DNA from: Trichoplax adhaerens
Taxonomy: Eukaryota; Animalia; Placozoa
Assembly: GCF_000150275.1 (NCBI RefSeq)
Contig: NW_002060944.1
Location: forward strand, 127,614 to 191,613
DNA: 64,000 nucleotides
Direction of reading: 5' to 3'
Positions within the stretch are counted from its first letter, which is position 1. Each line of letters begins with the position of its first letter. Below are positions 5,197 to 29,094 of this stretch, piece after piece. The notes under the pieces are model-generated. The model saw nothing but the letters and a program-made list of their open reading frames with translations, searched no databases and was not told the origin of the DNA. A program made the position numbers and the translations under genes.

Positions 5197-5607
5197 TTGC
5201 GCAAGACAAATGCAAGATCCGCAAATGATCGGGAAATAACAGAAAGTCATGATGTTTATTTTCAAAGAAATATTTTAATTCGATTATCAGTCCTTGATCA
5301 TAATCACCCCGATATTGCCAAATCTTACAATAATATTGGAATTATTAGCAAGAGCCAAGGCAAGAATGATGAGGCTCTACCTATGCATAAGAAAGCGCTT
5401 GAAATTCAAACTCCAGTACTTGGCAACAATCATCTCGATATTGCAAAATCGCACAGTAACATGGGGAGTGTATATTGTGAACTAGGTAAGTATGAAGAGG
5501 TTCTTGTTTAGTACGAAGTATCACTCAAAATGCGCATTTCCGTCCTTGATCATAACCAGCCCGAAATTGCAAAGTCTTACAACAGTATTGGAATTATCTA
5601 CCATTAA
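5197..5607 (+). pseudogene. Degenerate 42-aa TPR repeat fragment (KLC/NPHP3-type)
   Basis: About 2.5 HPDIAKSYNNIG-type repeats; in-frame TAG at 5509-5511, the frame resumes (YEVSLKMRISVLDHNQPEIAKSYNSIGIIYH) to TAA at 5605-5607; no convincing start. Confidence 0.8.
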
Positions 5608-5751
5608 TCTTAATAATTATAATCTTAATAATTTTTAACTTAATATTAAACGTATTGAAAATTCGTAGAGCAATTCTTATTAGAATCTAATGCGAGCTAG
5701 GAAAGATTTATCTATCTTAGGCTCCAAGCTGATGAAGTCATCGTCTAGGTA

Positions 5752-5776
5752 CAAAGATCAACTTTAGATAAATAAA
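5752..5776 (+). promoter_or_regulatory. Conserved non-coding motif CAAAGATCAA-YTTA-ATAAATAAA, copy upstream of gene A
   Basis: Starts 546 bp upstream of the ATG at 6298; near-identical copies at 25196 (546 bp upstream of the ATG at 25742) and at 21547. Confidence 0.5.
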
Positions 5777-6297
5777 TTACTTAAAGATACTCACAAATGC
5801 TACAGAATTAATATGAAAATATTACCAAAGAAAATAATTGTATTAATGCTAAGTTATTACTGTTAATATTAGAATATAATTTAATCCCGGGATTACAATT
5901 ATTATAAGTTTACGGCACAATGCGTATGATACTATAGTATTGACTAGCAATTTGGGTGAAAAAATTGAATGCAATACGTTTTTCAATAGGTATTGCTAAA
6001 AAAGTTAGTCCATTCTATTTCGTCAGGATCAACATTCATATTTTTTCAATGGATATTAAACTAATTGGGATATTGGTTGCAGCCGACGGTAAATCTTTGA
6101 GTACCTAATTGCATAATTTCGTTGATACTGGATAATTATTGAAGATATTTGTTTACCTGGCAATAAAAGTCCTTGAAAAAAGTAAAAGGTTGCATTTCAT
6201 TTGTAAATTAATAGTAGTGAAATAGATCGTTTCAAAACTATACTGAATTTATTACTCGATGATAATTCGTATTATGATTTTTATTTAAGTCTGAAGC

Positions 6298-9200
6298 ATG
6301 GACAATCAATCGGTAGCATCAGACATTGCTCAACAAATAAAATTTCTTTGCAAATTGGGGCAGCAAAATCATAAATCAAAAAAGGTCCAAGAGGCACTAT
6401 CTTATTATTCGCTAGCTTTAGAACTAATTCGGTCGTTAGCAGAAATTCCTTCCGACCTTGATGAACTTCAGTATGATATTTATCTTGCTGTTTCTGATAT
6501 TTATATACAACAAAAAGAGTGGGCTAAAGCTAGTGAATCCTGTCAGAAAGCACAAAATTTGGTAGACAAACCACACCAATTAATGAAAATTGCTCGAAAT
6601 TTAGATAGAATAGGCGAGATTAAAAGATCGTGTCGTGATTGGAATGGGGCATTGAATGAATATATAACATCTCTGGATATAAAGCTACGTGTATTAGAAA
6701 ACGACGATATCGATATTGCTGGATCATACAATAACATTGGAAATATCTATTGCGATCTAGATAAATATAAAGAATCGCTTTCTATGTATGAGAAATCACT
6801 CGAAATTTATATAGCAAGATTAGGCGATAATGATCTCCAGGTCGCCACATTATATAATATCATAGGTGTTGTCTATCATTATCAAGGCAAATGTGATGAG
6901 TCGATTTCTATGTATGAGAAATGCCTGAAAATTCGGTTATCGCAACTCGGTGATCATCATCTTGATGTTGCAACGCTATATAATAACTTGGGAGCTATTT
7001 ATCATTATCAAAGTAATTATGATCAGTCAATTTCTTGGTATAAGAAGTCATTAGACATTCAATTATCTCAATTTGGAGAATATCACCTTGATGTTGCCGA
7101 GATATATTATATCCTGGGACTTGTTTTTTACGAACAACATAAATACGATGAGTCCATTTACATATATAGGAGATCGCTAAAAATTCGATTACTGCTGCTT
7201 GGCGATAATCATCTTGATGCTGCTACATTATATAACAACCTAGGTGTTGTTTACTGTGATCAAGGCAAATATGATGAATCAATATGTATGTATAAGAAAT
7301 CTCTCCAAATTCGTTTACCACAACTTGGCGATAGTCATCTTCATGTTGCAGTCTCCTTTCATGGGTTAGGAGTTGTCTATAATGATCAAGGTAGATATGA
7401 TAAATCTCTTTCAATGTATAATAAGGCACTCAAGATTTACTTAAAACGATTTGGTGATAATCATCATTATGTTGCAAAGATATATAATAGGATAGGAAAC
7501 ATTTACAGTAATCAAGGCAAGCATGACGAAGCTTTTTCCATGTATTATCAGCTTCTAAAAATTTATTCACAAGCCTATGGGGATAATAATCATCCTGAGG
7601 TTGCTGCATTATATAAGAAATTGGGAATTGTATATTATCATCAAGCCAAATACGAACAAGCTCTTTCGATGTATCAAAATTCACTGCAAATGTATATGCA
7701 GATTTCTGATGATCAGCAACCCTTTGTTGCTGATTTATACAGCGAAATCGGTAGAGTTTATGCTAAGCTAGGGAGATTTGATGATGCTCTGTCTTTATGC
7801 CAGAAGTCATTGAGTATCATATTAAATCGGAATGGTAAAAATAATTACTATGCGGCTAAGTCGTATGAATATATGGCCTTTGTGTATTGCATTAACTCTA
7901 AGTTTGATGAAGCTATTCCTAAATATCAACAGGCAGCTACTATTCTACGTAATCTTTTAGAGGAAAATCATCCTCAAATTTCTAGACTTTACGATGATAT
8001 GGCAGATTGTTATGAACAACTGGATCGAAATAAGGAGGCTACTGATTTACGCAAAAAATCGAAATTTATTCAAAGTCAATTAAAATCTGAAGGTGCAGTA
8101 AATGAAAGACTTGTCAGTTGCGTGACACCATCTCAAGGTAATTCTTGCATAAGCGTATACATATGTAGAAGTGATTACATATTTATTTTAATACAATTTT
8201 ACAGGCGCGTAATAGACTATTCCTTATGTAGTATCCACTTCCATAAATATTATGATGATTTACTTAAATCATTCTAATATTTACATTGCTGATAGCCTTG
8301 ATTATTAAATCAAGATGAGTAATTGGGTACCGTAATTTTCAGTCGCCTTGATCCTTTTTTAGTGTGCCATGTTTTTACTAAGTAATGATTCTTTTAGACT
8401 TTATAGAGTTCGATAATATCTTAGTGCTTTAGCAATTAAGACATGGATATTAGTATCTCAGTAGCGTTTATGAAATGTATCCGTTATTAATAGCGCGTGC
8501 CTAAGTTAAATTACTATATCCCTAAAATCTGTTTGTGCATAAAAGTTAACCTTTGAATAGTATTGATAAATTAAAATGAGCATAACTGCTGCTGATATAT
8601 TCGCTTCCTACTAGTACAAAACGCATTAGCAAATTTAAGAGAATTTAAGTCCTAAAGTACTAATTTTGACTACAATAAAATGAAAGACATCAGTGAAATT
8701 CGCTTTTTCTTTTTAACAATATGTAAAACTGATTGGTGATTACTGCTAGGATGTAAAACAGTAGAAAATACAGGATCTAATCAAGATAGTAAAGTAATAT
8801 CGTCTGATGTACAACAGACGAAGGAAGACACAAAAGCCATAGAAGACTTTGAAGGTTAGTCATCAAGAGAAACCAGTCACTGGACTCTATTTTTCCTATA
8901 ATACATTAATAATTACTTTTCATGAGATGAGTAAAATATAAGTGAATTGCCTAATGTGAAAGAAATTTATCGTGAATCATGAATATAATGATATTTTACT
9001 CATTACAGATGATATAAATTAGGGTGATCATAGATTGTTTCTTTAAAATTTTTTATTACTTACAGAATTCTGCATTTTTTGAATATGCTTTAGAGAAGGA
9101 ATAGAATTACAGTATTTATATTAGTTTGATTCTATTTTAGCAATTAAGATGAAATATTAAACAATTAACGGTGAATTCATTGAATTATTTCATTTCTATT

Positions 9201-9448
9201 CTACAGTTTTTCAGCAACAGCTACCAGAATATCAAGTTTTATCTTGCGGCCGAGGTAAGAAATAATATTGGTAAAGGACAAAGATAGAATGATTTTGTGT
9301 AGAACTACATTACTACTAAGATGTATCGTAGACAGTACGGTAACTTTTCAGGTCTTTCAAGAACATTGAAATTAATCAGCTTTTAATACTTTCAATTTAT
9401 TTAATTTACCTGACTATAGAGGTTTACAATTCGTGTCTGATATTATAA
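6298..9448 (+). CDS. Gene A: TPR-repeat protein (~11 x 42-aa repeats) with a linker, ending in CaaX-like CLIL*; ~673 aa
   Basis: Exons 6298-8137, 8750-8854, 9207-9254, 9420-9448, all phase-1 GT-AG junctions. Exon 2 (...KAIEDFE) is homologous to exon 2 of genes B and C. Exons 3-4 resemble B exons 6-7. The 3' exons are less certain than exon 1. Confidence 0.8.
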
Positions 9449-9713
9449 CCAGTTAACTTCGTATTGCAAGCCTATTCCATCTAGAGGATCAGGTAGCATT
9501 ACCTTCTATGAAGTAGATGAGATTACAGTTTAAATGATATTCGAGAATGCATGGAGGAAGCATTTAGAATTTTGAATTTATAGCTGCAGGAAGGTTGTCA
9601 GAAAGCTGGTGTTTGTGAATTGATATAGGCCTAAAGTGCTAGGGGTTAATATGGTAATGTAAATCTGATGGAGGAGGAATTGGATCAGCGAACTTTGCAG
9701 TATAGTCTGTGAC
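9420..9713 (+). pseudogene. Decayed death-domain exon at the 3' end of gene A
   Basis: Begins EVYNSC (gene B last exon: ESFNKCFDI). After a 1-nt shift it reads DIITS*LRIASLFHL..., then in another frame MEEAFRILNL*LQEGCQKAGVCELI*A*SARG*, a death-domain helix 4-6 pattern with several stops. Confidence 0.6.
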
Positions 9714-10654
9714 ATGCAGACTTCTTGTCCGAGTTATAGAAATGGGCAAAGAATAAGCAAAGTGATGTCATGTAATATATAGAATTGCTAAAAAATAACG
9801 CTTTCAAGTAATTATGAACATCTCTAAATTAATTTCAAGTATTTTACTAGTTAAGGTTGCTGTTTTGGTATTGTAAATATTAAATTAATACTTAAATCGA
9901 TAACTTCAACATCGTAAAGTAATGTGGTCGCTACATAAAATCATCAGAGATAGTTCTCCATTGATCATCTTGCATGGTGAAGTGCCACTAGGTAGCAGCT
10001 AGATGAGGCAGATATTATTAACAGTAAATGTAATTTCTTAACGTAAAATGTTTGATTGGTGAAATTTAAAGTACCGGTATTCTTCTGGAATTGAAACGTT
10101 TTTATATTACTGTCAATTAATTATATACTTCAATTTTTCAATATAATTCGATATGAAATCATGATTTAAATTATTTGAAACGGGGTGTATGGCTCAATTA
10201 ATTTAATTTAAAAACAAGATTTGCAACTAGACTTTGTATTATTGAAGCTAAAAATAATTTACAACCGATGGAGAACTCTTAAAATCTCGTTTTTGATTAC
10301 TGAATTGCTAGAGACAACGTAGTTCTGGTATTTTCGACTTTGAATTAAAAATTTTGATGGCACATGGATACATGAAACCAAGAAAGTCTAGTGAAAGAAT
10401 CAAGCGATTCTAATTGAGTCGAGTTAACTCGTTACGGAGGTGATCTTTTTAAAGTTTGACGGTTAACTTTACTGGAATTTGCATAAAATAATGAGGATCA
10501 ATCTTTCCTGAATCTTCTACCTCTTTAACTCGAACTCAGTAGTTTTACTATTCCAGTTGTGTTTATTGATAATGAATGAGATAGATCATTGATAAAGTTT
10601 ACTATGGTTACCGCGCCATTATTTTCTGGCCAATATCATCTTTCGTTATCGTAG

Positions 10655-11180
10655 TACTAGACTAGATGGCCATTGCAACTATCTTTACTGTCGCGGTCCT
10701 CACCGACTACTTTCTGACAAGCTTACTAGTCTAACATTAAGCTCTTACCGTAAATTGTTTGTACAGATTGATACCCTAATCTAACGTAATATCGAATCTA
10801 ATTCTAGTGCTGCAATCCTAACAGCTCAGAACGACCTTTTTAAAAGGCTACTCATTATTTGTTAAGCATTATTACAATATTACTAGACTGGATGGCGATT
10901 TCATCTAATTTACTTTCGCGGTTCTTACTGACTCCTTCCCGACAAGTTTACTAGTTTAACATCAAGCTCTTTCTGAGAGTTGCTTGTGCAAATTGATGCC
11001 CTAAGCTACTGTAAGATCCAGTCTAATTCTAGTGCTGCTACTCTAACAACACGGAATTACCCTTTTGAAAGGCTACTCATTATTTGCTAAGCATTACTAC
11101 AGTAATACTAGACTTGGTCCCTATTTCATCTATTTTACTATATCGGTCCTCACCGATTACTTCCCGACCAGTTTATTAGC
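10655..11180. repeat. Diverged tandem repeat, ~225-226 bp unit, ~2.3 copies
   Basis: Units start TACTAGACT at 10655, 10881 and 11106; shared blocks include TCTAATTCTAGTGCTGC and AAAGGCTACTCATTATTTG. Confidence 0.85.
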
Positions 11181-11940
11181 TGTTATAATACCGTTAGAAT
11201 CCGAAAGTATTAATTTTATAATTGCCTTACTGATACTAAATTTAGTACAACTATTATTAGAGTATTTTGATATTATGATTATGATTACATGTTTCATGTT
11301 ATAGTCGCCGAACGTTGTTCTAGACAAGAGTCTTAGAGAAAGTGGGTTAACGTGGGGAAATCGTTTTCCATAATTAGTGGAGTGATGAAGACTAAATTAA
11401 GAGATAGAGATAGCAATAATAATATGTTTACGCATAGACGTTTTCTATACTGTATAATCAGAGTTTCTCTTAGAATAAAGACTACAGCTGCTAACGACTT
11501 TAGTTAAGACTTGGCTTTGTGTCTTAAAAGTTAACTTGTGTTTTTCTTGTTGCAGTTGCTGAGTTGTGGCACTAGTCTAGCATCAATCTCTTGCAAGAGG
11601 ATAATATTATCAGAAAGAAAGCACTGTACAAACAGAACCTTTCTACACTGTATAGTCTAATTGCAACATCATTTTGGATGTGTCGAAATGGGTGGACTGT
11701 ACACCGTACAGTGTATATATATTATGCACTCGAGATTGCAATTTTTGCATCAATTTATACAAAATTGATGCAAAGGATGGGTATTTTTGAAGCGTTTTAC
11801 TTCTGGTTTTTTACCATTCCAACATATCAAAGAAAATAGAACACATTACAGTATATAGGTAGACACAGATTTCTATGTTCTCTTTTACTGTGGTTTAACA
11901 TGGAAACATGTTAAGCCATGTTCAGGGTGGAAGGGTGGGG

Positions 11941-12075
11941 TTATAGTATTACTGTTACCATAACAACTGAGAATTACGCTTCTTAAAAGATCAAAATCAG
12001 CCAAGTGTGCGCGATTATAGTATTGCTACGATAACGGCTCAGAACTACTTTTCTAAAAGGCTTAAAATCAGTCGA
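11941..12075. repeat. Short tandem duplication (~74 bp), related to part of the 226-bp unit
   Basis: TTATAGTATT...ATAAC...AGAA...AAAATCAG occurs twice; it resembles CTAACAGCTCAGAACGACCTTTTTAAAAGGC near 10818. Confidence 0.55.
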
Positions 12076-12140
12076 GATACACTGTACTATAATCCGTAAA
12101 AGTAAACTACTGCATCGATTCAACTTTTCTACGTTGTACT

Positions 12141-12359
12141 GTAGAGTGTTTGGTGCGATAACACTTTAAGTAGATAACATTCAAGTTGGAAGTCATAACA
12201 AGTCTTTGATTTAACATTTTAACGTACGCTTATGGGATGGTAGTGAAGGATAGAAGATCATTGTAGAGTGTTTGATGAGATAACGCTTAAAGTAGCTAAC
12301 ATTCAAGTTGGAAGCCGTAACAAGTCCTTGGCTATACATTTTAACGAACTCCTGTGGGA
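12141..12359. repeat. Direct tandem duplication, ~122 bp unit, upstream of gene B
   Basis: GTAGAGTGTTTG...GATAAC...AAGTAG.TAACATTCAAGTTGGAAG...TAACAAGTC...ACATTTTAACG at 12141 and 12263. Confidence 0.85.
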
Positions 12360-12592
12360 GTTTGGGATGGTCAATTGGTATTGTATGATAGAAAATAGTT
12401 TTAGGATAGTTGCAGTCATTGGATAGGCCACAAATTTTCTCAATCAACGCATCCCAGGCAGATGCCATTTTAAATAGCGTTGGCTAATTAGCTTGAGGAA
12501 TAACATAGAAGTAAGAATAAATTCTTGACGGATCACTGAATAGCAGCTAAGGTACACGTGTTAGACAGTGTATCTCTTTCGATCTATTCGAT

Positions 12593-15500
12593 ATGGCTCT
12601 ACATCCTACCCAGTTGGACATCCTAGAACGCTTACTGTTACTCTATGAAGACGGTCGCCAAAGTCAGCAAAATTATAGAGATGAAGAAGCACTTTCCAGT
12701 TATTTACATGCTATCGATGAAATCCAATCCATCGTTCAACCAACTACCGAATTGGATGAATTACAATACGATATCTATCTTAATATTTGCGACATTTACA
12801 TACGACAACACCAATGGGTGAAAGCTGATGAATTATGTCTGAAAGCAAAGAAAATAGCATTAAAAGTAAACGATCAGTTGAAAGTTGCTCGATGTTTAGA
12901 TCGCCAAGGCGACATTCAATCACTGCAAGATAATGCAAGCGGAGCTTTAGATAATTATGTTAAATCACTGGGTATTAAGTTACAGTTATTAGGAGACAAT
13001 AATCTAGATATTTCCAGCTCTTATGGCAGAATTGGAATCGTCTACTACAACCAGGGAGAGCTTGATGAAGCTCTTTCGGCGTATGAAAAAGCGCTAAAAA
13101 TCGATGACAGAATATTTGGTCGTAGTCATCCCTGTGTTGCAGACTTGTATACCAGCATTGGTAAAATATACGATGATCAGAAAAAGTACAGTCAAGCGTT
13201 AAACAACTACAAAACGGCTCTTGAAATATGCAAGCATGTATATGACGATAATCATCCTAATGTTGCTCAGTTATATGCTAGCTTAGCAAGTATATACTAC
13301 AAACAAGGTAAGCACAAGCAGGCTCTTTCTATGTTTGAAAAATCGATAAAAATGGTCAAGCAAGTACATGGCGAAAATCATGCGGATATAGCTGTTTGGT
13401 ACCAAAACATAGCATTAGTGCTTCTAAATCAGGCAAAGTATGATCAAGCCATAACAATGTATAATCAGGCTATCAAAGTTTTACGTAATCTTTTCGGTGA
13501 AAGTCATCCTGATATTACCCAAATCAATAGCAAGATAGCCGATATAAATTATCAACGATATCAATCCGATATTGCTGTTCCAACGAAAGAAAGTGGTAAG
13601 ATAGTTGTAAGATGATCGTGAATAGAAATAGAATAAATTTATGTTCAATTAGTACTTATAGCGAGTAGTTTAAATGCGAAAGAATTTGTACTGTGTGACT
13701 TGTTAAATAAGTCGATACGGATATCCTCTTTCCACTAGTTCATTGCGTAACTGACCAGCATAAAGAACCCAATGAACGAATAAACTTAGCCAGTAGTTTT
13801 TTATATAAGGTTTACATAGTAAGGTATCAACGTGTACACTTACTTGACTTATAGGAAGTGAAGAATCTAACTCACAATATACGAAAGAAGAAAATGAAGC
13901 TATAAAAGAATTTATCGGTTTGTATTGAGGAGAAAGATTGTATTTTCAATATCGCAATCGTGACGTAATTATTGGTCGTTGTTTTACAAAATAATTATAG
14001 CTTAATGTCTTGTAAGAAAGTTGCTTAGTGTACTGATTGACTTGATAATATATCAGATACAACTGCTTTAAGGCGTTTCGAAAAATTAAAAAGTGTTCTA
14101 ATTTACACCTTATAATGCTGTACAGATGCGTGTTATTCTACGATTGCAAACTCCATTGGAAGTCATTGGATTGCATTGGCTTCTGATCTGGGCCTTTCCG
14201 ACCATGATATTAACTCCATTAAGAAACAATCTAGCAGTTCACCTACTCAGTCCACTTTAGCAACGCTAATGCTCAATTATTGGCGCAAGAGAAATTTAAC
14301 ACAAGATAACCTGACAATATTAATGAAGAGTCTTGCTGATTTAAAACAAAAAAAAATAGCATCTAGTTTGAATAATCTTTTAATTGAAAATCAAAAGAAT
14401 CCACTATGTTCTAAATACGTCACTACAGTTTTACAAGGTAACAGATTTAATGCTATCATTTAAATGAAGTGCTATTTTAAAATATTGCTTTAATTTAATC
14501 GTGAATAGAACTTACCCAAAAGAATACAGATCTAGAAAATGGTGATGGAAACGCAGATAGAGATGGTAAGAGGACACAAACTACATTGTGATGCATCTTG
14601 TTTCTTGTAAAATATCCGTAATCTTTTAATAATACGGCTTGCAGAATGTAATCAAGTTGTAGTCTTTAGCAGCTACGTAGTCAGGTATTTCAGTCTAGCA
14701 GAGTATTACTGATAGCCGATGTATGCAGCTTTATTGTCATACTGGTTTATGGTAATAATGTAATTAAACTAGAAAATCTAACGATAGGATATTCAGTATC
14801 ATAATGCCTAAAAAATTAATAAGCTATGAGTAGGTGGTGCATCTTATCAAAATTCTATAAAGTAATGTTATCGATATCTGACAGCTATAGAGTAAAGCAT
14901 TTCAGTACGTTAATGTTATAATAAAAAATTTAGAAAATTTCTACATTTGTATAGGATAACACATATGCGATCCATTAGTAATACATAACAACATAAGTGC
15001 TATTAATGATAATAATAAAGCTTCAGTAATGAGCTAATTAGTTATTAATATTGGCAAATTTATGGCTATGTTAATGTATTTTATCTAGCTGTAGAAGATA
15101 AAGAATATCTAGAAGACTATAATAGAGCATTAGAAGATGGTAAATGTAGTAATGATTTTACTAAAATTGTCATTGTCGGTCCTGAAAATGTCGGTAAATC
15201 ATCTATTATGAATGCATTTACTGAGGATGGAAAACTTAAGGAAACCCGCCAAACTGAGGTTGCTGAAGACACTAACAAATTAGTAAATCTTATCACATTT
15301 GATATTTTGAATAAGAAAGTAGTTGATTTTAGAAAAGTATTACTTCAGAAAGTACTCTTGGCAATAGAACGGTTTAAAAATCAAACTGACCCTAAATTAA
15401 CCGTTAATCAACAAGACGAATTGAACGCCAATCAAGAGGACAAAATCAACACCACATCTGATCATTCGCGTGGCCAAATGACCACTACAACTGAAAATAA

Positions 15501-18500
15501 TTTAGAAATAACGAAAGATGTGAACGAATTAGCTGTTGCAGAAGTAATAGAACCTACATTAAAAGCTGAAACAGTGGATAGTTCTACAGATATCGATAAT
15601 AATGCTGTAAAAGACGCAGAGAATAGCTCTATACCGAAAAATTATCCCACTCAAACTATACCTAAAGTAAATCATAAGCTCTCAATTTATGAAGATTTAA
15701 TACGATCTCTGACGGATACTAAGGGCAAGATTGAAGATGATAATACTAAAGATAATCGCTACGGAAAGCTAGTCGATTTTGGAGGTCAAGCTATCTATTA
15801 CGTAGCCCATCGCCCATTCCTATCTGGAAAGAGTATCTATGTGTTAGTTTTTAATATCAACCATACAATTGATACTCCAATAGAGGGCCGAAATAATAAA
15901 ACCATCGGTGTGACCTACCGACAAGCTATGCGAGAATGGCTAACCTCGACAATCAGTAGCCACAAGGGTAAAAGTACTCTCGATGTGAAAATTGGTGAGG
16001 AATATGCGACATACGATCTGCCGATTGTTATCCTGGTAGCATCACATGGTGATCTAGTAAAGCCTTCGGAACACCGTAAAAAATTTAGAATTTTCAAAAA
16101 TGCATTAGTCGAAGATATGCCAAAATATAGACGAAATATATGCAGTTCAAACATAATATTTCACTGTAAACCAAATGATAATACCAAAGCATCTGTTAAG
16201 CAAAGACGTGATACTAGTAGTACCCTGCATCAATTAATCAAGCAATTTGCTTTGAGTCAGCCGTTTATGAAAGAAGAAATTCCCATTCGATGGTATATTA
16301 TGGCATCAATACTACATACGTCAGCTGACGATAAAAGTAAGGAAACTGCATCAAAATCTAGCTATAAAGATATCTTACATCGAATACACAACATCATGAA
16401 ATACGATGAAATTAGACAGCTAGCTAAAGATTGTGAATTGTATGAGGACGAAAAAAATTTACGAAGTATGCTGCTGTACTTGCATGATATAGGCGATATC
16501 GTATTTTGTGAGAAAAAAGGGTGCGATGCAATGGTAGTAACTAATCTGGATTGGCTACTTGCAATATTTCGATCGATTATCAAAATTGGTGATGATAACT
16601 GCAAGAGTGCTTGCTCAGAAAGTTGCTGTAAAACTGCTCGTAAAACTGGTAAAATGTCAGAATCATGTATTGATGCAACTCTTGCTAACAGTGAAATAAA
16701 ACTAAATAAAGACGAAAAGGAGTTTACGAGTGCTTACTCAGAAAAAAAAAAAAGAAAAAGAAAAAGAAAAAGTTGCTATAAAACTGCTCGTAAAACTGCT
16801 CGTAAAACTGGTCAAATGTCAGTATCATGTATTGATACAACTCTTGCTGACAGTGAAATAAAATTAAATAAAGATGAAAAGGAGTTTATGAGTGCTCACT
16901 TAGAAAGTTGCTATAAAATTGCTCGTAAAACTGGTAAAATATCAGAATCATATATTGGTAAAATTCTTGCTAACAGTGGAATAAAATTAAATGATTACGA
17001 AAAGAAGTTTATTATACAATTAATGGAGAGCTATGATATCATTTGCAAGATAGAGAATAAAAATCAGAAAGGAGATGATGGTCGCCAGTTTATTGTGCCG
17101 TATTTGCTATATTCATCAGATAAAATGAAAGCTGATGATTGTATTCTTTCCGATTGGTTATACATTGGATACGATTGTAAAATTATACCCTATATTCCTG
17201 ACGGAATATTTTACTGCCTTTTATCAGCGTGTTTAAAGATATGGAATGTGTTAGACGTAGAGATCTACCGTCGATCTGCAAAATACAAACTGGAATTTCC
17301 TTATGGGATTATAATCAAGAAAGAAGATTCATATATTGGTTTACAATACTGTTACAAGGCTGAAAATAAAGCAATTGCTGAATACGTTAAAAAGGATATT
17401 AAATCTTCAATCAATGCTAATAAACCACAAGAAAAGATTAGAGACACTTTAGACACAGTAGTTAGTGAGAGGATGCCAAAATTTCAGAATGCACACTGTC
17501 AATTTTTTGTTAATTGCTCCTCATGTGGAGAGAAAACAACAATTACAAGCCATTTAAATGGACAGTTGACTTATATCTGTTGTTCAGAATGTAATACGCA
17601 CTTCAAATCAACAGCATTAAGCCAGTGGATGGGTGATAAGCTGGAAGAATTACCAGGTATCGATTGGATATTGAATTTTAGTTTAAATTGTTATTCTTTC
17701 ATATATTTTAATTTAAAACTATACGCCTGTTAAATAATGTATATCATCTGCACTTACTTGCACCGTTGCCGATTTACGATGCCCTATTTTTAAATTAGAT
17801 ATATCTTTATAGAACTATCAATTTATCACAAAATTGTTAAGGGGAAGGCTGTAAATTTTCACATATCCATAAAGACAGTGATATATCAAGAATATCAATT
17901 TAATTAATGTAACGTAAATGCATGTAGTGCTAGAAATTATTTAATTAATTAACTGGCAAATTTCAGTCAATTTTTCGCAGTCCATTAAGCCTTTCTTGGA
18001 TTTATAGAAAAAATATTTCACTCTATTTATGAATTCTACGCAAAGTTGATACCGTTGAAATTGTGGGCAATTCGCAAAAGAAAATTTCTATGTTATCTAC
18101 TTGAGGTTAATGTAGTACCACTAAGTGGCATATTACAAATTTTACGTCACGGATGATAGACCACAACTGAGTTTTTTTTAATTGTATTGGATTAACATTA
18201 TAATGGCCGATACAACAGATAAAGAATCGTAATAGAAATCAGTCGATTTTACTACTCTATTTTTATCTTTAGGTACGCAAGCACTATGCAAATATCAAGG
18301 GTTTTCTTACCAATTACATCGAGGTATTACCTTTTAATTTAAATTATTGGTAACTTAACTTCATTCATTATCTGTACATGCCATAATACGTATATTAAGA
18401 GGTGTCATTCTATTACAAACATCATTCCTTAAATGAATAATTTAATACTAATTTTAAAATGTGATTTAGATTTATGATTTTAAACCTATGCTGTGTAATA

Positions 18501-19455
18501 TGCTATATAAGTGAATGGTGACCAATAGATTATACTTATATTTATAGACGTTAGTAGAGAATTGTTGTAAATATGCAGAAATGTCCTACCATTAGGATTA
18601 ATAATTTACTATTGATTGTTGGTCGAGAATTCAACAAGTATTACTTATCATTTATGTAAGAAATCGATAACATACGTACTAGAATGATAATCATACAAAA
18701 ATTGAATACACTAACGGTAAATTTGAAAAAAATCTTAGTAAGCAAAGAGTATATAGCACTTCCTTTTAGTTGATAGATCGCTTATAAACGCCGCTTATAA
18801 ATCTTTTGCTTCATGAAGAAATGATTCATTCTAATATTGATTGAAGAGTTGATCTTATTGAAAGGGGCTATCCATACATTAAATATGTTCCTCTTAGATT
18901 CCTCAAAAAATAGTATAAACCTATTGAAAAAGTTTGCGTTGATTCATTAGTGACTTCTGTGTATTGCTGTAAGCTGAGTCAGAACTATAATTACTCTGTA
19001 AGTCTAATAGTCTTTAATAATTTAAAATACTAGTACATGACATTCATCTACAAATATCACTGACAAACGGAAAAAATATGTTCCATTTGGCTAATATGGA
19101 GTTTCATGATTGTCTAGGGAAGTTTAATTTTGATAGCAATATTTTAATAGTTGATCTTCTGTTCTTTTAAATAGAGAGCTTCAATAAATGTTTTGATATT
19201 GTAGCTGAAAAATTGTATAGTTACGAAATCTGTCCCTTTGGTGTTAAACTTGGCTTAGAATTTATCCCCATTAATGAAATCTGCGATGAAAAAGGCAAGC
19301 CCTACACGAAAACAATGAAAGTACTACACATGTGGCAACAAAAAGTCGGCTTGAATGCTGAAATAATCGATATTATTAAAGTCTTACAGGACATAAGTAG
19401 AGTTGATATAGTAGAGAAATTAAAATCCTATTTAAGTGATTTCTTGCGTGATTAA
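12593..19455 (+). CDS. Gene B: ROCO-family GTPase, TPR(~5 x 42 aa)-death domain-Roc-COR-CxxC/CxxC-death domain; ~1444 aa, 7 exons
   Basis: Exons 12593-13595, 13855-13917, 14126-14437 (DD1: IGSHWIALASDLGL...MLNYW), 14509-14565, 15089-17656, 18273-18323, 19175-19455 (DD2: LGLEF...VLHMWQQK...LQDISRVDI). All are phase 1 and the frame is open. Roc motifs: G1 GPENVGKS 15178-15201 (upstream of the ORF-track start), G3 DFGGQAIYYVAHRPFL from 15775, G4 LVASHGD. COR motifs: IPIRW, LLYLHDIGDIV, FIVPYLL, IPDGIFYCL. Confidence 0.88.
16606..17013 (+). repeat. In-frame triplication of a 123-bp (41-aa) unit inside the COR region of gene B
   Basis: Units start at 16606, 16729 and 16891 (SAxxESCxKxARKTGxxSxSxI..LAxSxIKLN..EKxF). 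Unit 2 is 162 bp = 123 + a 27-bp A-rich insert + a 12-bp TARK duplication. Confidence 0.92.
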
Positions 19456-22400: not shown

Positions 22401-25195
22401 AAACAATCTATTGCTTGAAAGTCAATAAAGTCAGATATCAACTACAACAACAATTTTGTAAGATAAATAGTTCGTTACTATTTTGAAATTGATTACTTGA
22501 CAGCTTGAAATTTATTCAAATTAGTTTTAGAATTTACCTATAAAAAATCTGGTAATGAATTAGAATGTGACAATATTACTGTTATGTATGGTCTACTACC
22601 GCGCTAGAAAGTAGTTTTATCCTACTCTAGGATATATCAAAACTCTCAGTAAGCGAAGAAATAATATAGAAATATGAATACTTATTTACTCACTGCAAAT
22701 TAGGTTTCTACAGCCTAGTAGTATTAACAGATAGGATACCTACTACTTAATAGATAGAATATCACTTTATTCATTTCTAATTAGGCTTTCTATAACCTAG
22801 ATAGTACGTTTATCCTACTTTAGCAAATGGCAAATAGATCAAGATTATTTTGACGATGAATAGCAGAGACGTTTTAATTCCTTGTTTTGGAACTGTCATT
22901 TTATTATCGCTGATGATAGCACACAATTAAATGTTACCACTGTAACAGAACAAAAATTTGATTGGAAAGTAGTTATCCCATTGCTAGGAGGCTTTATCGA
23001 TTATTGAGGTAAGAGAAACTAATTTTAAAACTATAGAGAAAGAAATTGAGATGATACTCCGTAAAAATATATAGGGCAGTTCACGTGGTCCGCATGTAGC
23101 ACCAACAGCATTAATTCCAAAATTCAACGAAAATGAAGATTTTGTGCTGACAATAGGAGATTAAATAAAGTGGCATTTGAAGGTGAGTATCTGTTACTAA
23201 GAGCAGATAATTCGTTAGATGTGTTATGAAAAGCTAAATGTTTTCCCACTTTAGAGTCTTTAAGTGAATATTGGCAGGTCCCAGCGGCTACAAATTCTGC
23301 AATCTCCAGCATTCATTGATTCTTTAACAGTGATTAAACGTATTAAATAGTACCAATTAAGGGCATAAAGTTATTAAATATGAAGATATGCTTATAGCAC
23401 TGGCATTTGATTTCATTTTTTTCAAGTATAACAGAAAATCACAGTAAATAATGTTACGGTTAGAATAAAGAATACCCTTCAATTTTTCCTTTACAATTTC
23501 CACTGACTACCAGAATGGTACTTTGATTGGTCGTACATTATGGCAATCAAAGAGGGTCGCGATAGAAAAATAAGGGCATTAATTTTCTTATTAGTAATAT
23601 TTTTATTGCAATTTTCGGTTACTTTAAAATCAAGAATTAACTAAGCCTGCTTATATTGGATTCTCAACATGTTGCTGTAAAGTGAAGTTATACTGGAATG
23701 GAATGGATCCTATTTCCTTCTCTTTTACAGCAAATAACCTCGATATTCCTGTAGTAGAATATATGCCTAAAAGTAGATCACAAGATCCTTTCTTTATTTG
23801 TGAAGATTTCAAACGATTCTCAATTAAATATCCTATAGAATCCATATTTTGATCTATTATCACGCGCAGTTTTCTCCATATCGCTAATTTTCAAGTTGCT
23901 TTTCAGCCTTCTTTACAGCTGTTCGGTGCACTCTTAGTTTTTTTTTTCTACGCATGTTGTTCCTGACTTCTATCTAACCTATAGATTCCCAAAGTATTAG
24001 TGATGAAATTAATTTCGATGAAGAGTTTATAAATCCCTCCATTTTGGTACTTAATTATGGCTGGATATTTACAATATTAATTTTATTTCTTTTTCTTCGT
24101 TATGCAGAATAGCAAACTTTATTAAAATATTAAATTAAGAGAATGGTTTATTTTAAGGATCATTAATTTCGAAATACGGTACCGCATTATTTAAAACAAT
24201 ATGTGTTAGTTTGTTAGGATTATCCCAGTAGTTGTTATTGACGAGTATTGAACTTTGGAATGTAAGCAATAGCTGAATTTGTACATGAAATTTCTAAATT
24301 TTATAGAAGTGTTAGTATTTCTACTTAAGCTAACTGATGGCATACCAAACTAGTGTAGTCCCACTGTTTACAGTATGGTACACTCCGGCACCTATTTGAC
24401 GATACGAATATGCTTCCTTTACATTTGCATATTTAGCCGATGTTCGTATCATAACCTAAGGTTATTACGAGTCCAAGTATCTAAAATAACTATTACAGGT
24501 TTATGAGTAAATATTCTTCAAGTTTTACTGGTGTTTGGGTCCAGCCTTTACGTCCAATAGATACGTTTTACTATATCCTCTATATTTATTTTTGATCGAT
24601 TTTGTTTTATGTTCTTGTATAATTGATTAGCTGTGCTTAAAATATAATAAAAATTTAAAATTTAAATATTTCCAGTAATATAATTTACCTATTGCCGAAT
24701 TAGTATGCGAAATTAATTTATTGTATTACTCGCTTTCATTCATTCGTTCGATTTACTGTGGTGTTGAGTACTTTATAGTGTTGCAATATTAATAATTACT
24801 GTATATATTGTAGATAGTTATCCTTAGTGAAGCATCAAATCTGTTAATTATATTCATTTTCGAACTCCCGATATTTAGCTTCCAATTTTAACTCCCTGAC
24901 TGCGGCAAATAATCATTTCTAATTGTAAACTATTTGAATTGATTTGAGTTCGTTACAGGCTGGACATGGAAATTCAATATTACTTTAAAGCAGTTCTAAG
25001 AGAGATTATTTCCTGTTTTAGTTTTCGGTAACCTTCGTGCGACCCATTTGTAGCAGCGTCATAAATAATGATGTCGGAAAGTAAGGTCAACAAAAATGAC
25101 TTTAAAGAATGTAAACATAAAGTTGACGTTCTACCAGTAGCGATTAAAACGATGATGTTTGTCAAGTTTTATCAGATTGAATAATCATTGGTGAG

Positions 25196-25220
25196 CAAAG
25201 ATCAATTTTAAATAAATAAA
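25196..25220 (+). promoter_or_regulatory. Conserved non-coding motif, copy upstream of gene C
   Basis: CAAAGATCAATTTTAAATAAATAAA, 546 bp upstream of the ATG at 25742; matches 5752 and 21547. Confidence 0.5.
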
Positions 25221-25741
25221 TCTTGATCACAAATGTTCAACAACTAAACGTATATTGAACATAATGCATAGATTTTACAGTGATGATATTCAGACAGCAT
25301 AAAGATTGATTAATCGTGATATGAATAATTTCGCAAAAATTTTAATAATATGCAAGTTTATTACTTTAAAATTCGATCCACTGGTAAATTAAAAAATGAA
25401 TTAAGCTGTAATAAAGAATCAAATTAAATAGCTCATAAAGCCAGGTATCTTATGTAATTTAATTAATTTATTTTCTTTTAATTTGGATTATAATTTCAAT
25501 GCTAGTGAATAAAATTTATGCTCTGAAGGATTGCAATGGACAGTAAGCTGTCTAAATGACTTGATCAAAAGCTTCCGAGAAGAAACCAAATCATAGCGCT
25601 TTGTTTATTTTGAAATGCTTGGCTGTATGGTTTCCACTATACACTTTACTTCCTCAAGGGCATAACATCCATCTGCAGATAAGTTACCATCATCCAGAGC
25701 TCCTGTGTACGTATATATTGGATGTTTCTTGCGTTTAAAAT

Positions 25742-28700
25742 ATGGGCGGTCGATGCACAAAACTTACTCATGGCCAACGAGTAAGGTCTCTTTATAATCA
25801 GGGTCAGGATAGTCTTAAATCGCGAAATGTATCGGAAGCTCTAAACCATTATGAACTAGCTTTAGAACAAATTCAATCATCCTCTCGGATTACTCCTGAG
25901 TTCAATAAACTTCAATACAACATTTATCTTGATATTTGCTACATTTACATAAATAATGGAGATTTTTCTAAAGCTAATGATTGCTGTCAAGCAGCAGAAA
26001 AGCTGGCTGATAAACCGAGCAAATTGTCTGAAATTACTTGTTGTTTGGAGATGATAAGCCAACGCAAAATTGCGCATAATGATTGGAATGGGGCATTAAA
26101 TGATTACCAAAAATTGTTGGAAATAAAGCTAAATTCGTTAAAGTGCAATGATGAAGATGTCGCTAGCTTATACGATAATATTGGAAAGATCTATTGCGTT
26201 CTACGCAAATTTGATGAGTCACTTACTATGTATGATAAGCTACAGAAGATTTACTCAGTAAGATCTGCAGATGAAAATTTTGATGTAGCTAGAGCGCTTT
26301 TGTGTCAAAACATAGGGATTGTTTATTATCATCAAGTCAAATACGAAAAGTCGCTCTCTATGCATAAAGAATCGCTTCAGATTTACTTACGAAGACATGA
26401 TGAAAATGATCTTAAAGTTGCTACTTTTTATAATAACATTGGAGCTGTCTACTGTAGTAAAGGAAAATACAATGATTCACTTTCTGCATACGGAAAATCG
26501 CTCGAAATTTATTTGAAAGTAAAAGGTGATAATAATCTCCACGTTGCCAAGCTTTATAACAATATGGGATTTGTCTATTACTATCAAGGCAAATACGTAG
26601 ATTCGCATTCGATGTACGAAAAGTCCTTAAACATTTTTAAAGCAAGAGTTGGTCTAAATCATCTTTATGTCGCTACGCTCCATAATGACTTTGGAGCGCT
26701 CTATTACGATCAAGGCAAATATATTAAATCATATAATATGTACGATAAGGCTCTTAAAAGTCTTATGAAGCTACACGGTGATCATGAACTTGATATCGCA
26801 GTCTCATATCAAGGTCTAGCTTCTGTCTCTAGTGATCTAGGCAAATGGAATGAGTCCTTTTCTATGTGCGAGAAGTCACTTAACATTTACTTAGAAAAAC
26901 TTAGTGATAAGCATCCTAACCTTGCCAAAGTGTATATTATCCTGGGAAACATCTATCATGATCACGGTAATTATCTCCAAGCTCTTAATATGTATCAAAA
27001 GTCACTTCAGATTTATAGGCTTGTTTATGATTACGATCATCCTAATATTGCCACAGTCTACAAGAAAATTGCGACTATTTATTACCAGCAAGAGAAATAT
27101 GATAATGCATTCTTTGAACTTACGGCAGCACTCAAAATTTACCAGCAAATGCTTGATAAGGATCATCCTCTTATTGCTGATTTGCATAACGAAATAGGTA
27201 GAATCTACGCTAAACAAGGAAAATTCGATGATGCTATATCTGTATGTCGAAAGTCCCTCCAGATAATATTAAATCAAATGGGTAAAAAGCATAAATATGC
27301 TGCTAAAACATTCGAATATTTAGCAATCGCTTACTATACCACCTCCCAATATGACAAAGCCTTACCAAAGTATGAAAAAGCTGTTAGTATTTTATTTGAT
27401 CTATTTGGAGAAAATCATCCTGAAATTTCTAGATTATACAAGGACATCGCTAATTGTTATGAACAACTCCATCAAAATGATAATGCAACTGTTTGGCGTA
27501 ACAAATCAGATCTAATTAGAAGTCAAACACAATCTGATAATATAGTGGATGAATGTCTTAGCCACTCAGCACCATCACACGGTATGACAATATTTTATTT
27601 GTATTAGTCGATAAGAAATTCTATACATAATTAGTTTAGACTTATAGCAAAATCACTTTCTTCAACTAATGCTTATCTTATTTTCATCAGATAATATGTT
27701 TTAGTATTTGCTAAAAATACGGCTATCTATAACATTATACATTCTTTCACAGATAAATGTATAGTTTATAATATTATCCAAGTCATTTATGTGCTGATAA
27801 CTAATGTTTACGTAAATTGACTATAAACTTACAGGTATTTTGAAAAGTTTAGGTTTAATTTTGTCTAGTAGAGACTAGTTAAATTATTGTTCCTCCTAAC
27901 GATAGGAAATCGTCAGTAGTTAGGGTGATACTGAGAATAGATGTCGGAGATGATAAACTTGACATTTAATGGGCACTTCTGTAGTTGTCTATAATCGTTT
28001 AGCAAGTTATCATTACAACTTTAAATTTGTAACAAGACTAAGTCTATACGATATTAATTTTCGGTTTCATTTTTTGTGGCACAAGCAAAAGTAGATTAAT
28101 TTGTTGTCGGTTTGATATCTTCTTAGTGCTAGAACTTTAGTAATTTTTGAGAAATTACGTAGAATGGAGCTAGTATTAATTTGATAGGTATACTGTACCA
28201 TATAAAATATAAATTGTGAAATACATAGATTAAGAAAGCTTTCAACTTTTAAATGAGTAAGTGTTGTTTCGCTGCGATTATTACCCGATTTATAGAAAAT
28301 GTAATGTCTGATCAAAATTACAAAGATAATTTGCCTAAAGTAGAATATACAGAAGAAGAAAAAAAGTATATTGAAAAATTGAATGGTTTGTATTAAGGAA
28401 AAATGTGTTATTTAATACGTTAATATTTCTCTAGAAATTTAAGGATTATCCCTTTCATAGATAGATGGAATCCATAATGACATGTTTATTTAGAGCTTTA
28501 TAATTAGTACAGCAGTTTTAGACATTTGCTAACATACAATAACACGTAGGTAGTGTAATAATGAAATTGAAACTTTACTTTTTTCCTATAATCTACCCTA
28601 TAGAAAACTGTTACTTTGTGATCGCATCTTCCATTGGAAAAGAATGGCAAAGATTAGCTAAGGAACTGGGGCTGCCAGACGATGAAATTAAATCTCTTCA

Positions 28701-29094
28701 ACAACAAGGCCGAAACAAAGGCGGTTATTCGACTCTGGCTGTGGACATGTTAAAATATTGGCAGAAGAGAAATTTAGCATCGAATGATCTAACGATGTTA
28801 ATAGCTGGTCTTGATCATTTAGGCCAAAATAGCTTAATCGATAGTCTAAAGAAGATACTGATTCAAAATCAGTCGCACCAGTTCTTATCCAAATATATCA
28901 AAACAATTTTACAAAGTAAAAGATTGAAAATTTAAATTTATCGTCACTTACTCTTTAGCGGTATTTACCAATAAATTTCAAAGTGCGAAAATCGAGTGAT
29001 AGATTTAGCTACTAAAATGGCAAGAAAATATTATTAGTCTATTCATTTTTTAACATCAATCATTCATATTTATTTTACAGAGTCATTTGGCTAG
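25742..29094 (+). CDS. Gene C: TPR(~11 x 42 aa)-death-domain protein with N-terminal MGGRCTK acylation-like motif; ~751 aa
   Basis: Exons 25742-27581 (1840 nt, same length as gene A exon 1), 28296-28385, 28604-28915 (312-nt DD exon, same length as B DD1: IGKEWQRLAKELGL...MLKYW), then 29081-29094 (KSFG*). All phase 1. The terminal exon is less certain. No Roc-COR was seen downstream. Confidence 0.85.

What the first reader, a model, noticed from the sequence alone, without database searches (positions are those of the whole stretch)
5197..29094. Modular TPR / death-domain / ROCO gene cluster: candidate innate-immune or cell-death receptor system with adaptor or decoy paralogues
Seen: three co-oriented paralogues share an N-terminal cap (ELQY[D/N]IYL...CL[D/E]...GAL.[D/E/N]Y), a single-exon 42-aa TPR array and a homologous linker micro-exon, but differ in C-terminal modules. 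B is TPR-DD1-Roc-COR-DD2, C is TPR-DD1, A is TPR plus a decayed DD2. A TPR pseudogene lies upstream. Established: ROCO proteins (LRRK2, DAPK1, MFHAS1 family) are Roc-COR GTPases, death domains mediate homotypic signalosome assembly, and repeat-sensor + NTPase + death-fold is the layout of NLR-type receptors. Inference: a birth-and-death family in which one full GTPase receptor is flanked by GTPase-less partners that could recruit or inhibit it via DD1-DD1 or TPR contacts. As I recall, placozoan ROCO expansions have been noted before, so the novelty lies mainly in the clustered truncated partners.
Basis: partly seen in the sequence, partly recalled or inferred. Interest (0 to 1): 0.9.

Follow-up and report, generated by a model that had tools for sequence, protein, structure and literature searches.

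The report
Placozoan TPR death-domain Roco gene trio
Three neighbouring Trichoplax genes belong to an already catalogued placozoan family that joins TPR repeats, death domains and a Roc-COR GTPase switch; one copy is complete, two are shortened derivatives, and an immune role is still only an analogy.

Summary
The window is Trichoplax adhaerens. Gene B (12593-19455) has five exons, cap+TPR / linker micro-exon / Death / Roc-COR-zinc ribbon / Death, about 1408 codons. Every intron is GT-AG and phase 1. Gene C (25742-28935) is cap+TPR / micro-exon / DD1-type Death. Gene A (6298-~9448) is cap+TPR / micro-exon plus a badly decayed DD2-type exon, supported only by two weak colinear profile hits. Pfam, profile-to-PDB searches and an AlphaFold model place B in the ROCO family, next to CtRoco, LRRK1 and LRRK2.

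The kind is known. Civiero et al. 2014 listed at least 17 T. adhaerens ROCO genes with TPR, Death and CARD domains. Trichoplax sp. H2 has annotated TPR-Death-Roc-COR-Death proteins. This scan met the family before on other DNA of this genome.

Truncated relatives are common: at least 135 cap matches against about 48 Roc-COR loci, and TPR-only and TPR-Death proteins are annotated in H2.

New here:
- The three genes are unannotated.
- C's stop codon comes from read-through of an old splice donor.
- B's COR carries a 41-aa triplication.

No RNA evidence could be obtained. The immune, adaptor or decoy role is untested.

The parts
5260..5604 (+). TPR pseudogene fragment of about 2.7 repeats, with no cap, no start and an internal stop at 5509
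   Evidence: Pfam TPR_12 2.4e-23. The tblastn matches of P0001 and P0002 run through the stop.
6298..8137 (+). Gene A exon 1: N-terminal cap plus about 11 TPRs of 42 residues. The donor is AAG|GTAATT, phase 1, at the position homologous to C's donor.
   Evidence: It is 46% identical to C over 605 aa.
8774..8854 (+). Gene A linker micro-exon (..TKEDTKAIEDFE), donor G|GTTAGT, phase 1. The choice of acceptor is uncertain.
9420..9700 (+). Gene A decayed DD2-type death-domain exon, with at least 3 frame changes and at least 4 in-frame stops. Read from the phase-1 acceptor at 9420, it gives EVYNSCLIL and a stop at 9446-9448.
   Evidence: Colinear weak profile hits, with no such pair in 300 shuffles or 18 controls. 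Not seen by Pfam Death or by DNA alignment.
12593..13595 (+). Gene B exon 1: cap plus about 4.5 TPRs
13855..13917 (+). Gene B linker micro-exon (63 nt, phase 1-1)
14126..14437 (+). Gene B DD1 death-domain exon (phase 1-1)
   Evidence: Pfam Death 5.1e-11; own-genome Death scan 42.8 bits.
15089..17656 (+). Gene B Roc-COR exon. It carries a P-loop GPENVGKS, DFGGQ and SHGD, a roughly 90-aa disordered insert in Roc, and a CxxC...CxxC zinc-ribbon-like end.
   Evidence: Pfam Roc and COR-A. Profile hits to Roco2, CtRoco, LRRK2 and LRRK1. AlphaFold pTM 0.73. Foldseek hits to LRRK1, CtRoco RocCOR and LRRK2 with E down to 1.5e-13.
16791..17012 (+). In-frame tandem repeat inside B's COR (123-nt unit). Reading the translation, an earlier third copy begins near 16540. 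It includes a KKKRKRKRK run.
   Evidence: TRF period 123, 84% matches; translation; low pLDDT at residues 501-546.
19175..19455 (+). Gene B DD2 death-domain exon, ending in stop TAA
   Evidence: Pfam Death 2.5e-5, 24.7 bits against a cut-off of 22.6.
25742..27581 (+). Gene C exon 1: cap plus about 11 TPRs. It starts MGGRCTK.
28296..28385 (+). Gene C linker micro-exon (90 nt, phase 1-1)
   Evidence: tblastx and blastn matches to B's micro-exon.
28604..28935 (+). Gene C DD1-type death-domain exon. The last 6 codons and the stop align to the start of B's intron 3.
   Evidence: Pfam Death 5.3e-11. The dd1 profile scores 152.9 bits against 26.9 for dd2. Alignment.
29968..30383 (-). Decayed COR fragment of another ROCO copy, in the opposite orientation
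   Evidence: tblastn of P0001 and P0002; roc profile hit at 30135-30347; only short broken ORFs.
39274..39681 (-). Decayed TPR fragment
   Evidence: tblastn; broken ORFs.

Best explanation
This is a tandem trio of separate genes from the placozoan-specific 'cap-TPR' family, which supplies the N-terminal module of most Trichoplax ROCO proteins.

B is a complete, kinase-less ROCO protein: cap-TPR, linker, Death (DD1), Roc-COR GTPase with a zinc-ribbon end, and Death (DD2).

A and C are shortened derivatives of B-type genes. C kept TPR-linker-DD1 and now stops by reading into what used to be the intron after DD1. A kept TPR-linker; its DD1 and Roc-COR exons are gone and its DD2 exon has decayed.

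Every module is a phase-1/phase-1 exon, so modules can be lost, gained or swapped without breaking the frame. This is the likely engine of the family's diversity.

Inferred mechanism, not shown: TPR repeats bind a ligand or partner, Roc-COR acts as a nucleotide-dependent dimerisation switch as in CtRoco and LRRK2, and the death domains nucleate homotypic assemblies. A and C are maintained as TPR-only and TPR-Death proteins with functions of their own.
For: - Domains.
- ROCO membership by profile, predicted structure and fold.
- Canonical phase-1 GT-AG junctions, with exon sums divisible by 3.
- B is colinear with the annotated H2 protein P0001, which maps exon by exon at 90-99% identity onto the nearest own-genome paralogue L001 and includes the micro-exon.
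- The micro-exon motif precedes DD1 in P0001, P0002 and P0003.
- In C's tail, 11 of 13 bases are identical to the start of B's intron 3, and the GT is retained.
- A's dead DD2 exon.
- The TPR exons of A and C remain open for 613 codons in 31-33% GC DNA. They are only 46% identical to each other, and A's DD exon has collected several stops and frameshifts. This argues for continued selection on the TPR exons: plus inference.
- Family size: about 48 Roc-COR loci, at least 125 Death exons and at least 135 cap matches.
- TPR-only and TPR-Death relatives exist in this genome and in H2.
- Published catalogue: PMC4104024.
Against:
- No protein at least 90% identical to A, B or C exists in public protein sets within the searchable length ranges. 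Other family members have 98-100% identical H2 orthologues. The trio may therefore be unannotated, lineage-specific or not expressed.
- A's dead exon rests on weak hits.
- Extra small exons, as in P0001 between Roc-COR and DD2, could be missed.
- The functional part is analogy only.
Confidence: 0.7

Rival explanations
1. A and C, and perhaps the whole trio, are non-functional relics of gene birth-and-death. They are neither expressed nor used.
For: - Decayed fragments surround them.
- A has a dead exon.
- C ends in former intron sequence.
- No annotated model or H2 orthologue was found.
Against: - The TPR exons are open for 613 codons at 31-33% GC, despite 54% divergence between A and C.
- Splice donors and the micro-exon motif are conserved.
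- TPR-only and TPR-Death relatives are annotated genes in H2, conserved at 98-99% between lineages.
Confidence: 0.15
2. A and C are adaptors, decoys or inhibitors that engage B through DD1-DD1 (C) or TPR (A) contacts. They may be tethered to membranes by lipid anchors: C starts MGGRCTK and A may end in CLIL.
For: - C carries the DD1 type found internally in ROCO proteins. The six other TPR-Death-only loci examined (L002-L007) do not carry a clear DD1 type: five carry the tail type and L007 is ambiguous.
- The genes are adjacent and co-oriented.
- Lipidation-type motifs recur in the family: P0001 starts MGIWTSK and P0089 ends CVLL.
Against: - There is no interaction or co-expression evidence. 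The complex prediction gave no verdict.
- B-DD1 and C-DD are not resolved as sisters (support 47/7) and are only about 46% identical.
- Truncated relatives are scattered genome-wide and are not specifically paired with ROCO genes.
Confidence: 0.15
3. A is an alternative 5' module of B. Transcripts starting at A splice from A's exon-1 or micro-exon donor to B's micro-exon or DD1 acceptor, in frame. One GTPase engine would then have two TPR sensors, in the manner of a variable-first-exon cluster.
For: - All junctions are phase 1, so A-to-B splicing is in frame.
- A's micro-exon and its donor are intact, although A's own downstream death-domain exon is dead.
- A and B are co-oriented and 4.4 kb apart.
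Against: - It needs read-through across B's promoter and a 5.3-kb intron.
- H2 annotates the comparable TPR-only neighbour P0049 as a separate gene with its own terminal exons.
- A short terminal exon with a stop is available at 9420-9448.
- No reads were available.
Confidence: 0.07

Closest known systems
Trichoplax ROCO expansion (Civiero et al. 2014, PMC4104024). Trichoplax sp. H2 proteins are annotated 'Nephrocystin-3' or 'Kinesin light chain', e.g. P0001 (RDD39303.1, 1524 aa) and P0002 (RDD40155.1, 1547 aa).
   Same: The order TPR-linker-Death-Roc-COR-Death is the same. B is colinear with P0001 along its whole length. The cap, the micro-exon motif and the zinc-ribbon cysteines are shared.
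   Different: B's Roc-COR exon is only 44-50% identical to the closest listed protein. B has a B-specific 41-aa triplication in COR. A, B and C have no near-identical public protein. The paper lists architectures but does not discuss truncated TPR-only or TPR-Death relatives.
DAPK1 (human ROCO protein with a C-terminal death domain)
   Same: A Roc-COR tandem followed by a death domain.
   Different: B has no kinase, calmodulin-binding or ankyrin region. It has TPRs and a second, internal death domain. By sequence and fold its Roc-COR is nearer to CtRoco, LRRK1 and LRRK2.
MFHAS1/MASL1 and prokaryotic Roco (C. tepidum Roco, M. barkeri Roco2)
   Same: A kinase-less repeat-Roc-COR layout. These give the best profile matches (E 1.7e-21 to 2e-19), and the RocCOR tandem gives a fold match (3dpu, E 2.3e-12).
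   Different: The repeats are TPR, not LRR. Death domains and a zinc ribbon are added, and there is a long disordered insert in Roc.
NLR/STAND receptors, including the TPR-bearing NB-ARC proteins of placozoans (Kamm et al. 2019, PMC6321704)
   Same: The overall logic is the same: a repeat sensor, a nucleotide switch and a death-fold domain. Both show clustered, fast-turnover gene families and truncated relatives.
   Different: The switch is a Ras-like Roc GTPase with COR, not a NACHT or NB-ARC STAND ATPase. No such domain was found. The repeats are N-terminal.

Membership tests
ROCO (Roc-COR) proteins | Ras-like Roc GTPase domain with nucleotide-binding motifs | tested here: met
   Pfam Roc scores 35.0 bits against a cut-off of 27, matching the P-loop part only because of an insert. 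GPENVGKS, DFGGQ and SHGD are present and conserved in the family alignment. The profile hits the Roc domains of CtRoco, Roco2 and LRRK2.
ROCO (Roc-COR) proteins | COR domain directly C-terminal to Roc, in the same polypeptide | tested here: met
   Pfam COR-A scores 43.1 bits against a cut-off of 35.3. It lies in the same 2568-nt exon. The profile hits the COR of LRRK1 and CtRoco. Foldseek matches the RocCOR tandem 3dpu (E 2.3e-12) and LRRK1 (E 1.5e-13).
ROCO (Roc-COR) proteins | GTP binding or hydrolysis, and COR-mediated dimerisation | not testable with these tools
   This needs biochemistry on the expressed Roc-COR.
Death domain (Pfam PF00531) | Score above the curated cut-off of 22.6 bits | tested here: met
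   B DD1 scores 43.0, B DD2 24.7 and C DD 42.9 bits. All three are also found by the own-genome scan.
Death domain (Pfam PF00531), gene A | A recognisable death domain downstream of A's TPR exon | tested here: inconclusive
   There is no Pfam hit at E <= 1, even reading through stops. There are only two colinear sub-threshold hits to a 5-sequence tail-DD profile, with no such pair in 300 shuffles. If real, it is dead.
TPR_12 / KLC-NPHP3-type 42-residue TPR arrays | Tandem 42-residue TPR units | tested here: met
   TPR_12 E-values are 1e-132 (A), 9.5e-63 (B) and 1.2e-96 (C). Lag 42 is the top autocorrelation lag in A and C, and second to 84 in B.
Nephrocystin-3 (the name given to H2 relatives) | Orthology to NPHP3 beyond the TPR region | tested here: not met
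   Only the TPR_NPHP3 repeat model matches: A 184 and C 155 bits, B 87 bits, below the cut-off of 100. The rest of the protein is Death and Roc-COR. The name reflects repeat similarity only.
NLR / STAND receptors | Central NACHT or NB-ARC STAND NTPase | tested here: not met
   No NACHT or NB-ARC match occurs in any exon. The switch is Roc-COR. The resemblance is functional analogy only.
DAPK1 family | N-terminal Ser/Thr kinase and ankyrin repeats before Roc-COR | tested here: not met
   No kinase or ankyrin match. The N-terminus is cap-TPR.

The most novel reading that the evidence does not exclude
The trio is a small variable-exon cluster. A's intact TPR exon and micro-exon are an alternative 5' module. 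Its own death-domain exon is dead, but its phase-1 donor survives. It would be spliced in frame onto B's DD1-Roc-COR-DD2 exons, so that one GTPase engine is served by interchangeable sensors. C would act as a myristoylated DD1 adaptor for the same engine.
Probability: 0.08. Interest if true: 0.7.

Novelty: new member of a known kind. Interest (0 to 1): 0.3.

Why it matters
Placozoans lack canonical LRR-type NLRs, RIG-I-like receptors and cGAS-STING (PMC6321704). They do carry dozens of kinase-less ROCO genes joined to death-fold domains. If these genes are intracellular sensors, they would be an NLR-like system built on a different switch.

This locus adds three unannotated members. It also gives a clear worked example of how the family diversifies:
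- Every module is a phase-1 exon.
- One copy lost its GTPase and now stops in a former intron.
- Another copy lost everything but the TPRs.

That is useful for re-annotating the genome and for choosing constructs. It does not change what is known about the family's function, which remains untested.

Tried and rejected
No junction is confirmed by reads.
2. Complex prediction of B-DD1 with C-DD gave no verdict, score 0.00, with uncertain folds and no controls run. This is neither support nor evidence against binding.
3. A single-sequence phmmer search of the Roc-COR exon against PDB found nothing. A family profile was needed.
4. A's dead exon was not detected by blastn or tblastx against B or C, by local DNA alignment (z = -0.3), by mixed DD profiles or by the Pfam Death genome scan. 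Only the subtype profile plus the colinearity test gave a signal.
The representative library is clustered at 50% identity and cannot settle it either.
6. The DD1 tree could not resolve whether C-DD and B-DD1 are sisters.
It was redone with references only.
8. The joined spliced proteins of A, B and C were not built, searched or folded.
9. A full coordinate census crossing the cap, Death and Roc-COR hit lists was not done by script. Only 14 loci were fetched and checked.


Full report
**Source.** The genome is 105.6 Mb in 1414 contigs, and the window is C1413:127614-191613. The best protein matches are Trichoplax adhaerens and Trichoplax sp. H2 proteins. I take the window as T. adhaerens.

**Observation.**
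- A's ORF (6298-8274) contains only TPRs.
- B has TPR (12593-13612), Death (14116-14460, 5.1e-11), Roc plus COR-A (15049-17730) and a second Death (19171-19452, 24.7 bits against a cut-off of 22.6).
- C has TPR (25742-27604) and Death (28543-28932, 5.3e-11).
- The upstream piece (5182-5508) is a TPR fragment. It has no start, and a stop lies inside the homology.

The N-terminal cap is shared, with 33 invariant columns in 131. The repeats have a 42-residue period.

**Gene models.** Reading the junctions directly gives the following.
- B has exons 12593-13595, 13855-13917, 14126-14437, 15089-17656 and 19175-19455. That is 4227 nt, or 1408 codons.
- C has exons 25742-27581, 28296-28385 and 28604-28935, or 753 codons.
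- All introns are GT-AG and phase 1.
- A's exon 1 ends at 8137 (TPSQ|G), the position homologous to C's donor (PSH|G) and B's (KES|G). The remainder of the 659-aa ORF is therefore intron read-through.
- A's micro-exon is about 8774-8854.

The micro-exons of B and C match by tblastx and blastn. The motif ..AI[KED][ED]F lies immediately before DD1 in the annotated H2 proteins P0001, P0002 and P0003.

B is colinear with P0001. P0001 itself maps exon by exon at 90-99% identity onto B's nearest own-genome paralogue, L001, in the same order and including the micro-exon. P0001 has an extra small exon before DD2, so B may hold small exons that I cannot see.

The joined proteins were not assembled or searched. 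Everything was done exon by exon.

**B is a ROCO protein.**
- The exon carries GPENVGKS, DFGGQ and SHGD.
- A 26-sequence family profile hits M. barkeri Roco2 (1.7e-21), C. tepidum Roco (about 1e-20), LRRK2 (1e-13) and the COR of LRRK1.
- The AlphaFold model built on that alignment has pTM 0.73. By Foldseek it matches LRRK1, the CtRoco RocCOR tandem and LRRK2, with E from 1.5e-13 to 1e-9.
- The model shows a roughly 90-residue disordered insert inside Roc (exon residues 104-193). This explains why Pfam Roc matches only the P-loop part.
- Four near-invariant cysteines (CxxC...CxxC) end the exon.
- B alone has an in-frame 41-aa tandem triplication at the start of COR-B.

**The truncated copies.**
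- C's death domain is of the DD1 type, scoring 152.9 bits against 26.9 for the tail type.
- Its last six codons and stop align with the exon end and the first 13 intron bases of B's DD1 exon. Eleven of those 13 bases are identical, and the GT is retained while the last exon base has changed from G to A. C therefore derives from a gene that once continued into a Roc-COR exon.
- A has the DD1-preceding linker but no DD1 and no Roc-COR.
- About 565 nt after the linker lies a weak trace of a B-type tail death domain. It appears as two sub-threshold profile hits in different frames with matching spacing, a pattern absent from 300 shuffles and 18 control segments. Pfam and DNA alignment do not see it.
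- From the phase-1 acceptor at 9420, the reading is EVYNSCLIL then a stop.
- The TPR exons of A and C stay open for 613 codons in 31-33% GC DNA, although the two are only 46% identical. A's death-domain exon, by contrast, has decayed. I infer continued selection on the TPR parts.
- The caps of A and C are sisters with 100/97 support. B is unresolved. The DD1 tree is also unresolved.

**Context in the genome.**
- The Roc-COR exon has about 48 related loci.
- Pfam Death finds at least 125 exons.
- The cap profile finds at least 135 places.
- Fetched examples show full DD1-Roc-COR-DD2 paralogues (L001, L013, L014), TPR-Death-only genes (L002-L007) and TPR-only genes of up to about 27 repeats (L009).
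- Five of the six TPR-Death-only loci examined carry the tail-type death domain; L007 scores alike on both profiles. This makes C's DD1 unusual.
- In H2, P0089 (TPR-Death, 503 aa, ending CVLL) and P0049 (TPR-only) are annotated genes. They are 98-99% identical to their T. adhaerens loci.
In T. adhaerens, a cap (12078786) and Roc-COR (12075004-12077103) lie within about 10 kb downstream of P0049's orthologue on the same strand of C1414, though I did not show this is P0012's orthologue.
- Truncated relatives, including ones beside ROCO genes, are therefore a general feature of the family and not special to this locus.

**Public annotation.** No protein at least 90% identical to A, B or C was found, though their predicted lengths fall inside each search's length window. 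Given the 98-100% identity of other H1/H2 pairs, the trio is either unannotated in both lineages or absent from H2. I cannot tell which.

**Literature.**
- Civiero et al. 2014 (PMC4104024) reported at least 17 T. adhaerens ROCO genes flanked by CARD, Death, TPR, LRR and AAA domains.
- A 2024 paper restates this (PMC11378527).
- Kamm et al. 2019 (PMC6321704) treats placozoan NLR and Apaf-1 expansions but not ROCO genes.
- I found no paper on the truncated relatives or on function.
- This scan has already met the same family on other DNA of this genome.

**Function.** Nothing here tests an immune or cell-death role.
I went on with other tools, as its message said.
- The DD1-DD1 complex prediction returned no verdict.
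- The mechanism I favour is inferred from what is established for CtRoco, LRRK2 and death-domain signalosomes. TPRs would bind a partner, Roc-COR would work as a nucleotide-dependent dimerisation switch, and the death domains would drive homotypic assembly.

**Verdict.** The object is three unannotated new members of a known, published kind. The adaptor/decoy idea is possible but unsupported. The modest new details are C's read-through stop, A's exon losses, the uniform phase-1 design and B's COR repeat.

Noticed in passing
window 25742-25765; 9420-9448; P0001 N-terminus; P0089 / L002 C-terminus: Lipid-anchor-type motifs recur in the family. C starts MGGRCTK (Gly2, Thr6). The H2 paralogue P0001 starts MGIWTSK. 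The H2 TPR-Death protein P0089 and its T. adhaerens orthologue end in CVLL. A's phase-1 reading of the dead exon ends in CLIL. Some members may be membrane-tethered.
   Followed up: partly
window 16540-17012: There is an in-frame tandem triplication of a 41-aa unit at the start of COR-B, found in B only. It includes a KKKRKRKRK run. TRF reports period 123 and 84% matches, and the model has low confidence there.
   Followed up: partly
window 15398-15667 (exon residues 104-193): A roughly 90-residue polar, disordered insert lies inside the Roc domain, between switch I and DFGGQ. Paralogues also have a variable insert at this point.
   Followed up: partly
window 17513-17592 (exon residues about 809-834): Four near-invariant cysteines (CxxC...CxxC) form a zinc-ribbon-like element between COR and the last intron. 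They are conserved across the 26-sequence family alignment.
   Followed up: partly
window 29968-30383 (-) and 39274-39681 (-): Decayed COR and TPR fragments lie on the opposite strand, downstream of C. They are relics of further family copies.
   Followed up: partly
window 10655-11179 and 12140-12359: Intergenic tandem repeats lie between A and B: a 225-nt unit x2.3 at 79% and a 122-nt unit x1.8 at 83%. The second lies about 230 nt upstream of B's start codon. Their nature is unknown.
   Followed up: no
L001 3586-3861 (-) = G000:C1389:83585-83860: In the P0001 orthologue locus, a further DD1-like death domain lies only about 400 nt downstream of the DD2 exon. It is either an extra exon or the start of another gene.
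   Followed up: no
L002-L006, L013, L014 versus B, L001: There are two distinct subtypes of C-terminal death domain in the family: 'CFDIIAEKL...EIDEI' and 'HFFxIAxxIGxDWTxLA'. They are distributed independently of how closely the Roc-COR cores are related. This agrees with earlier notes of swapped tail exons.
   Followed up: partly
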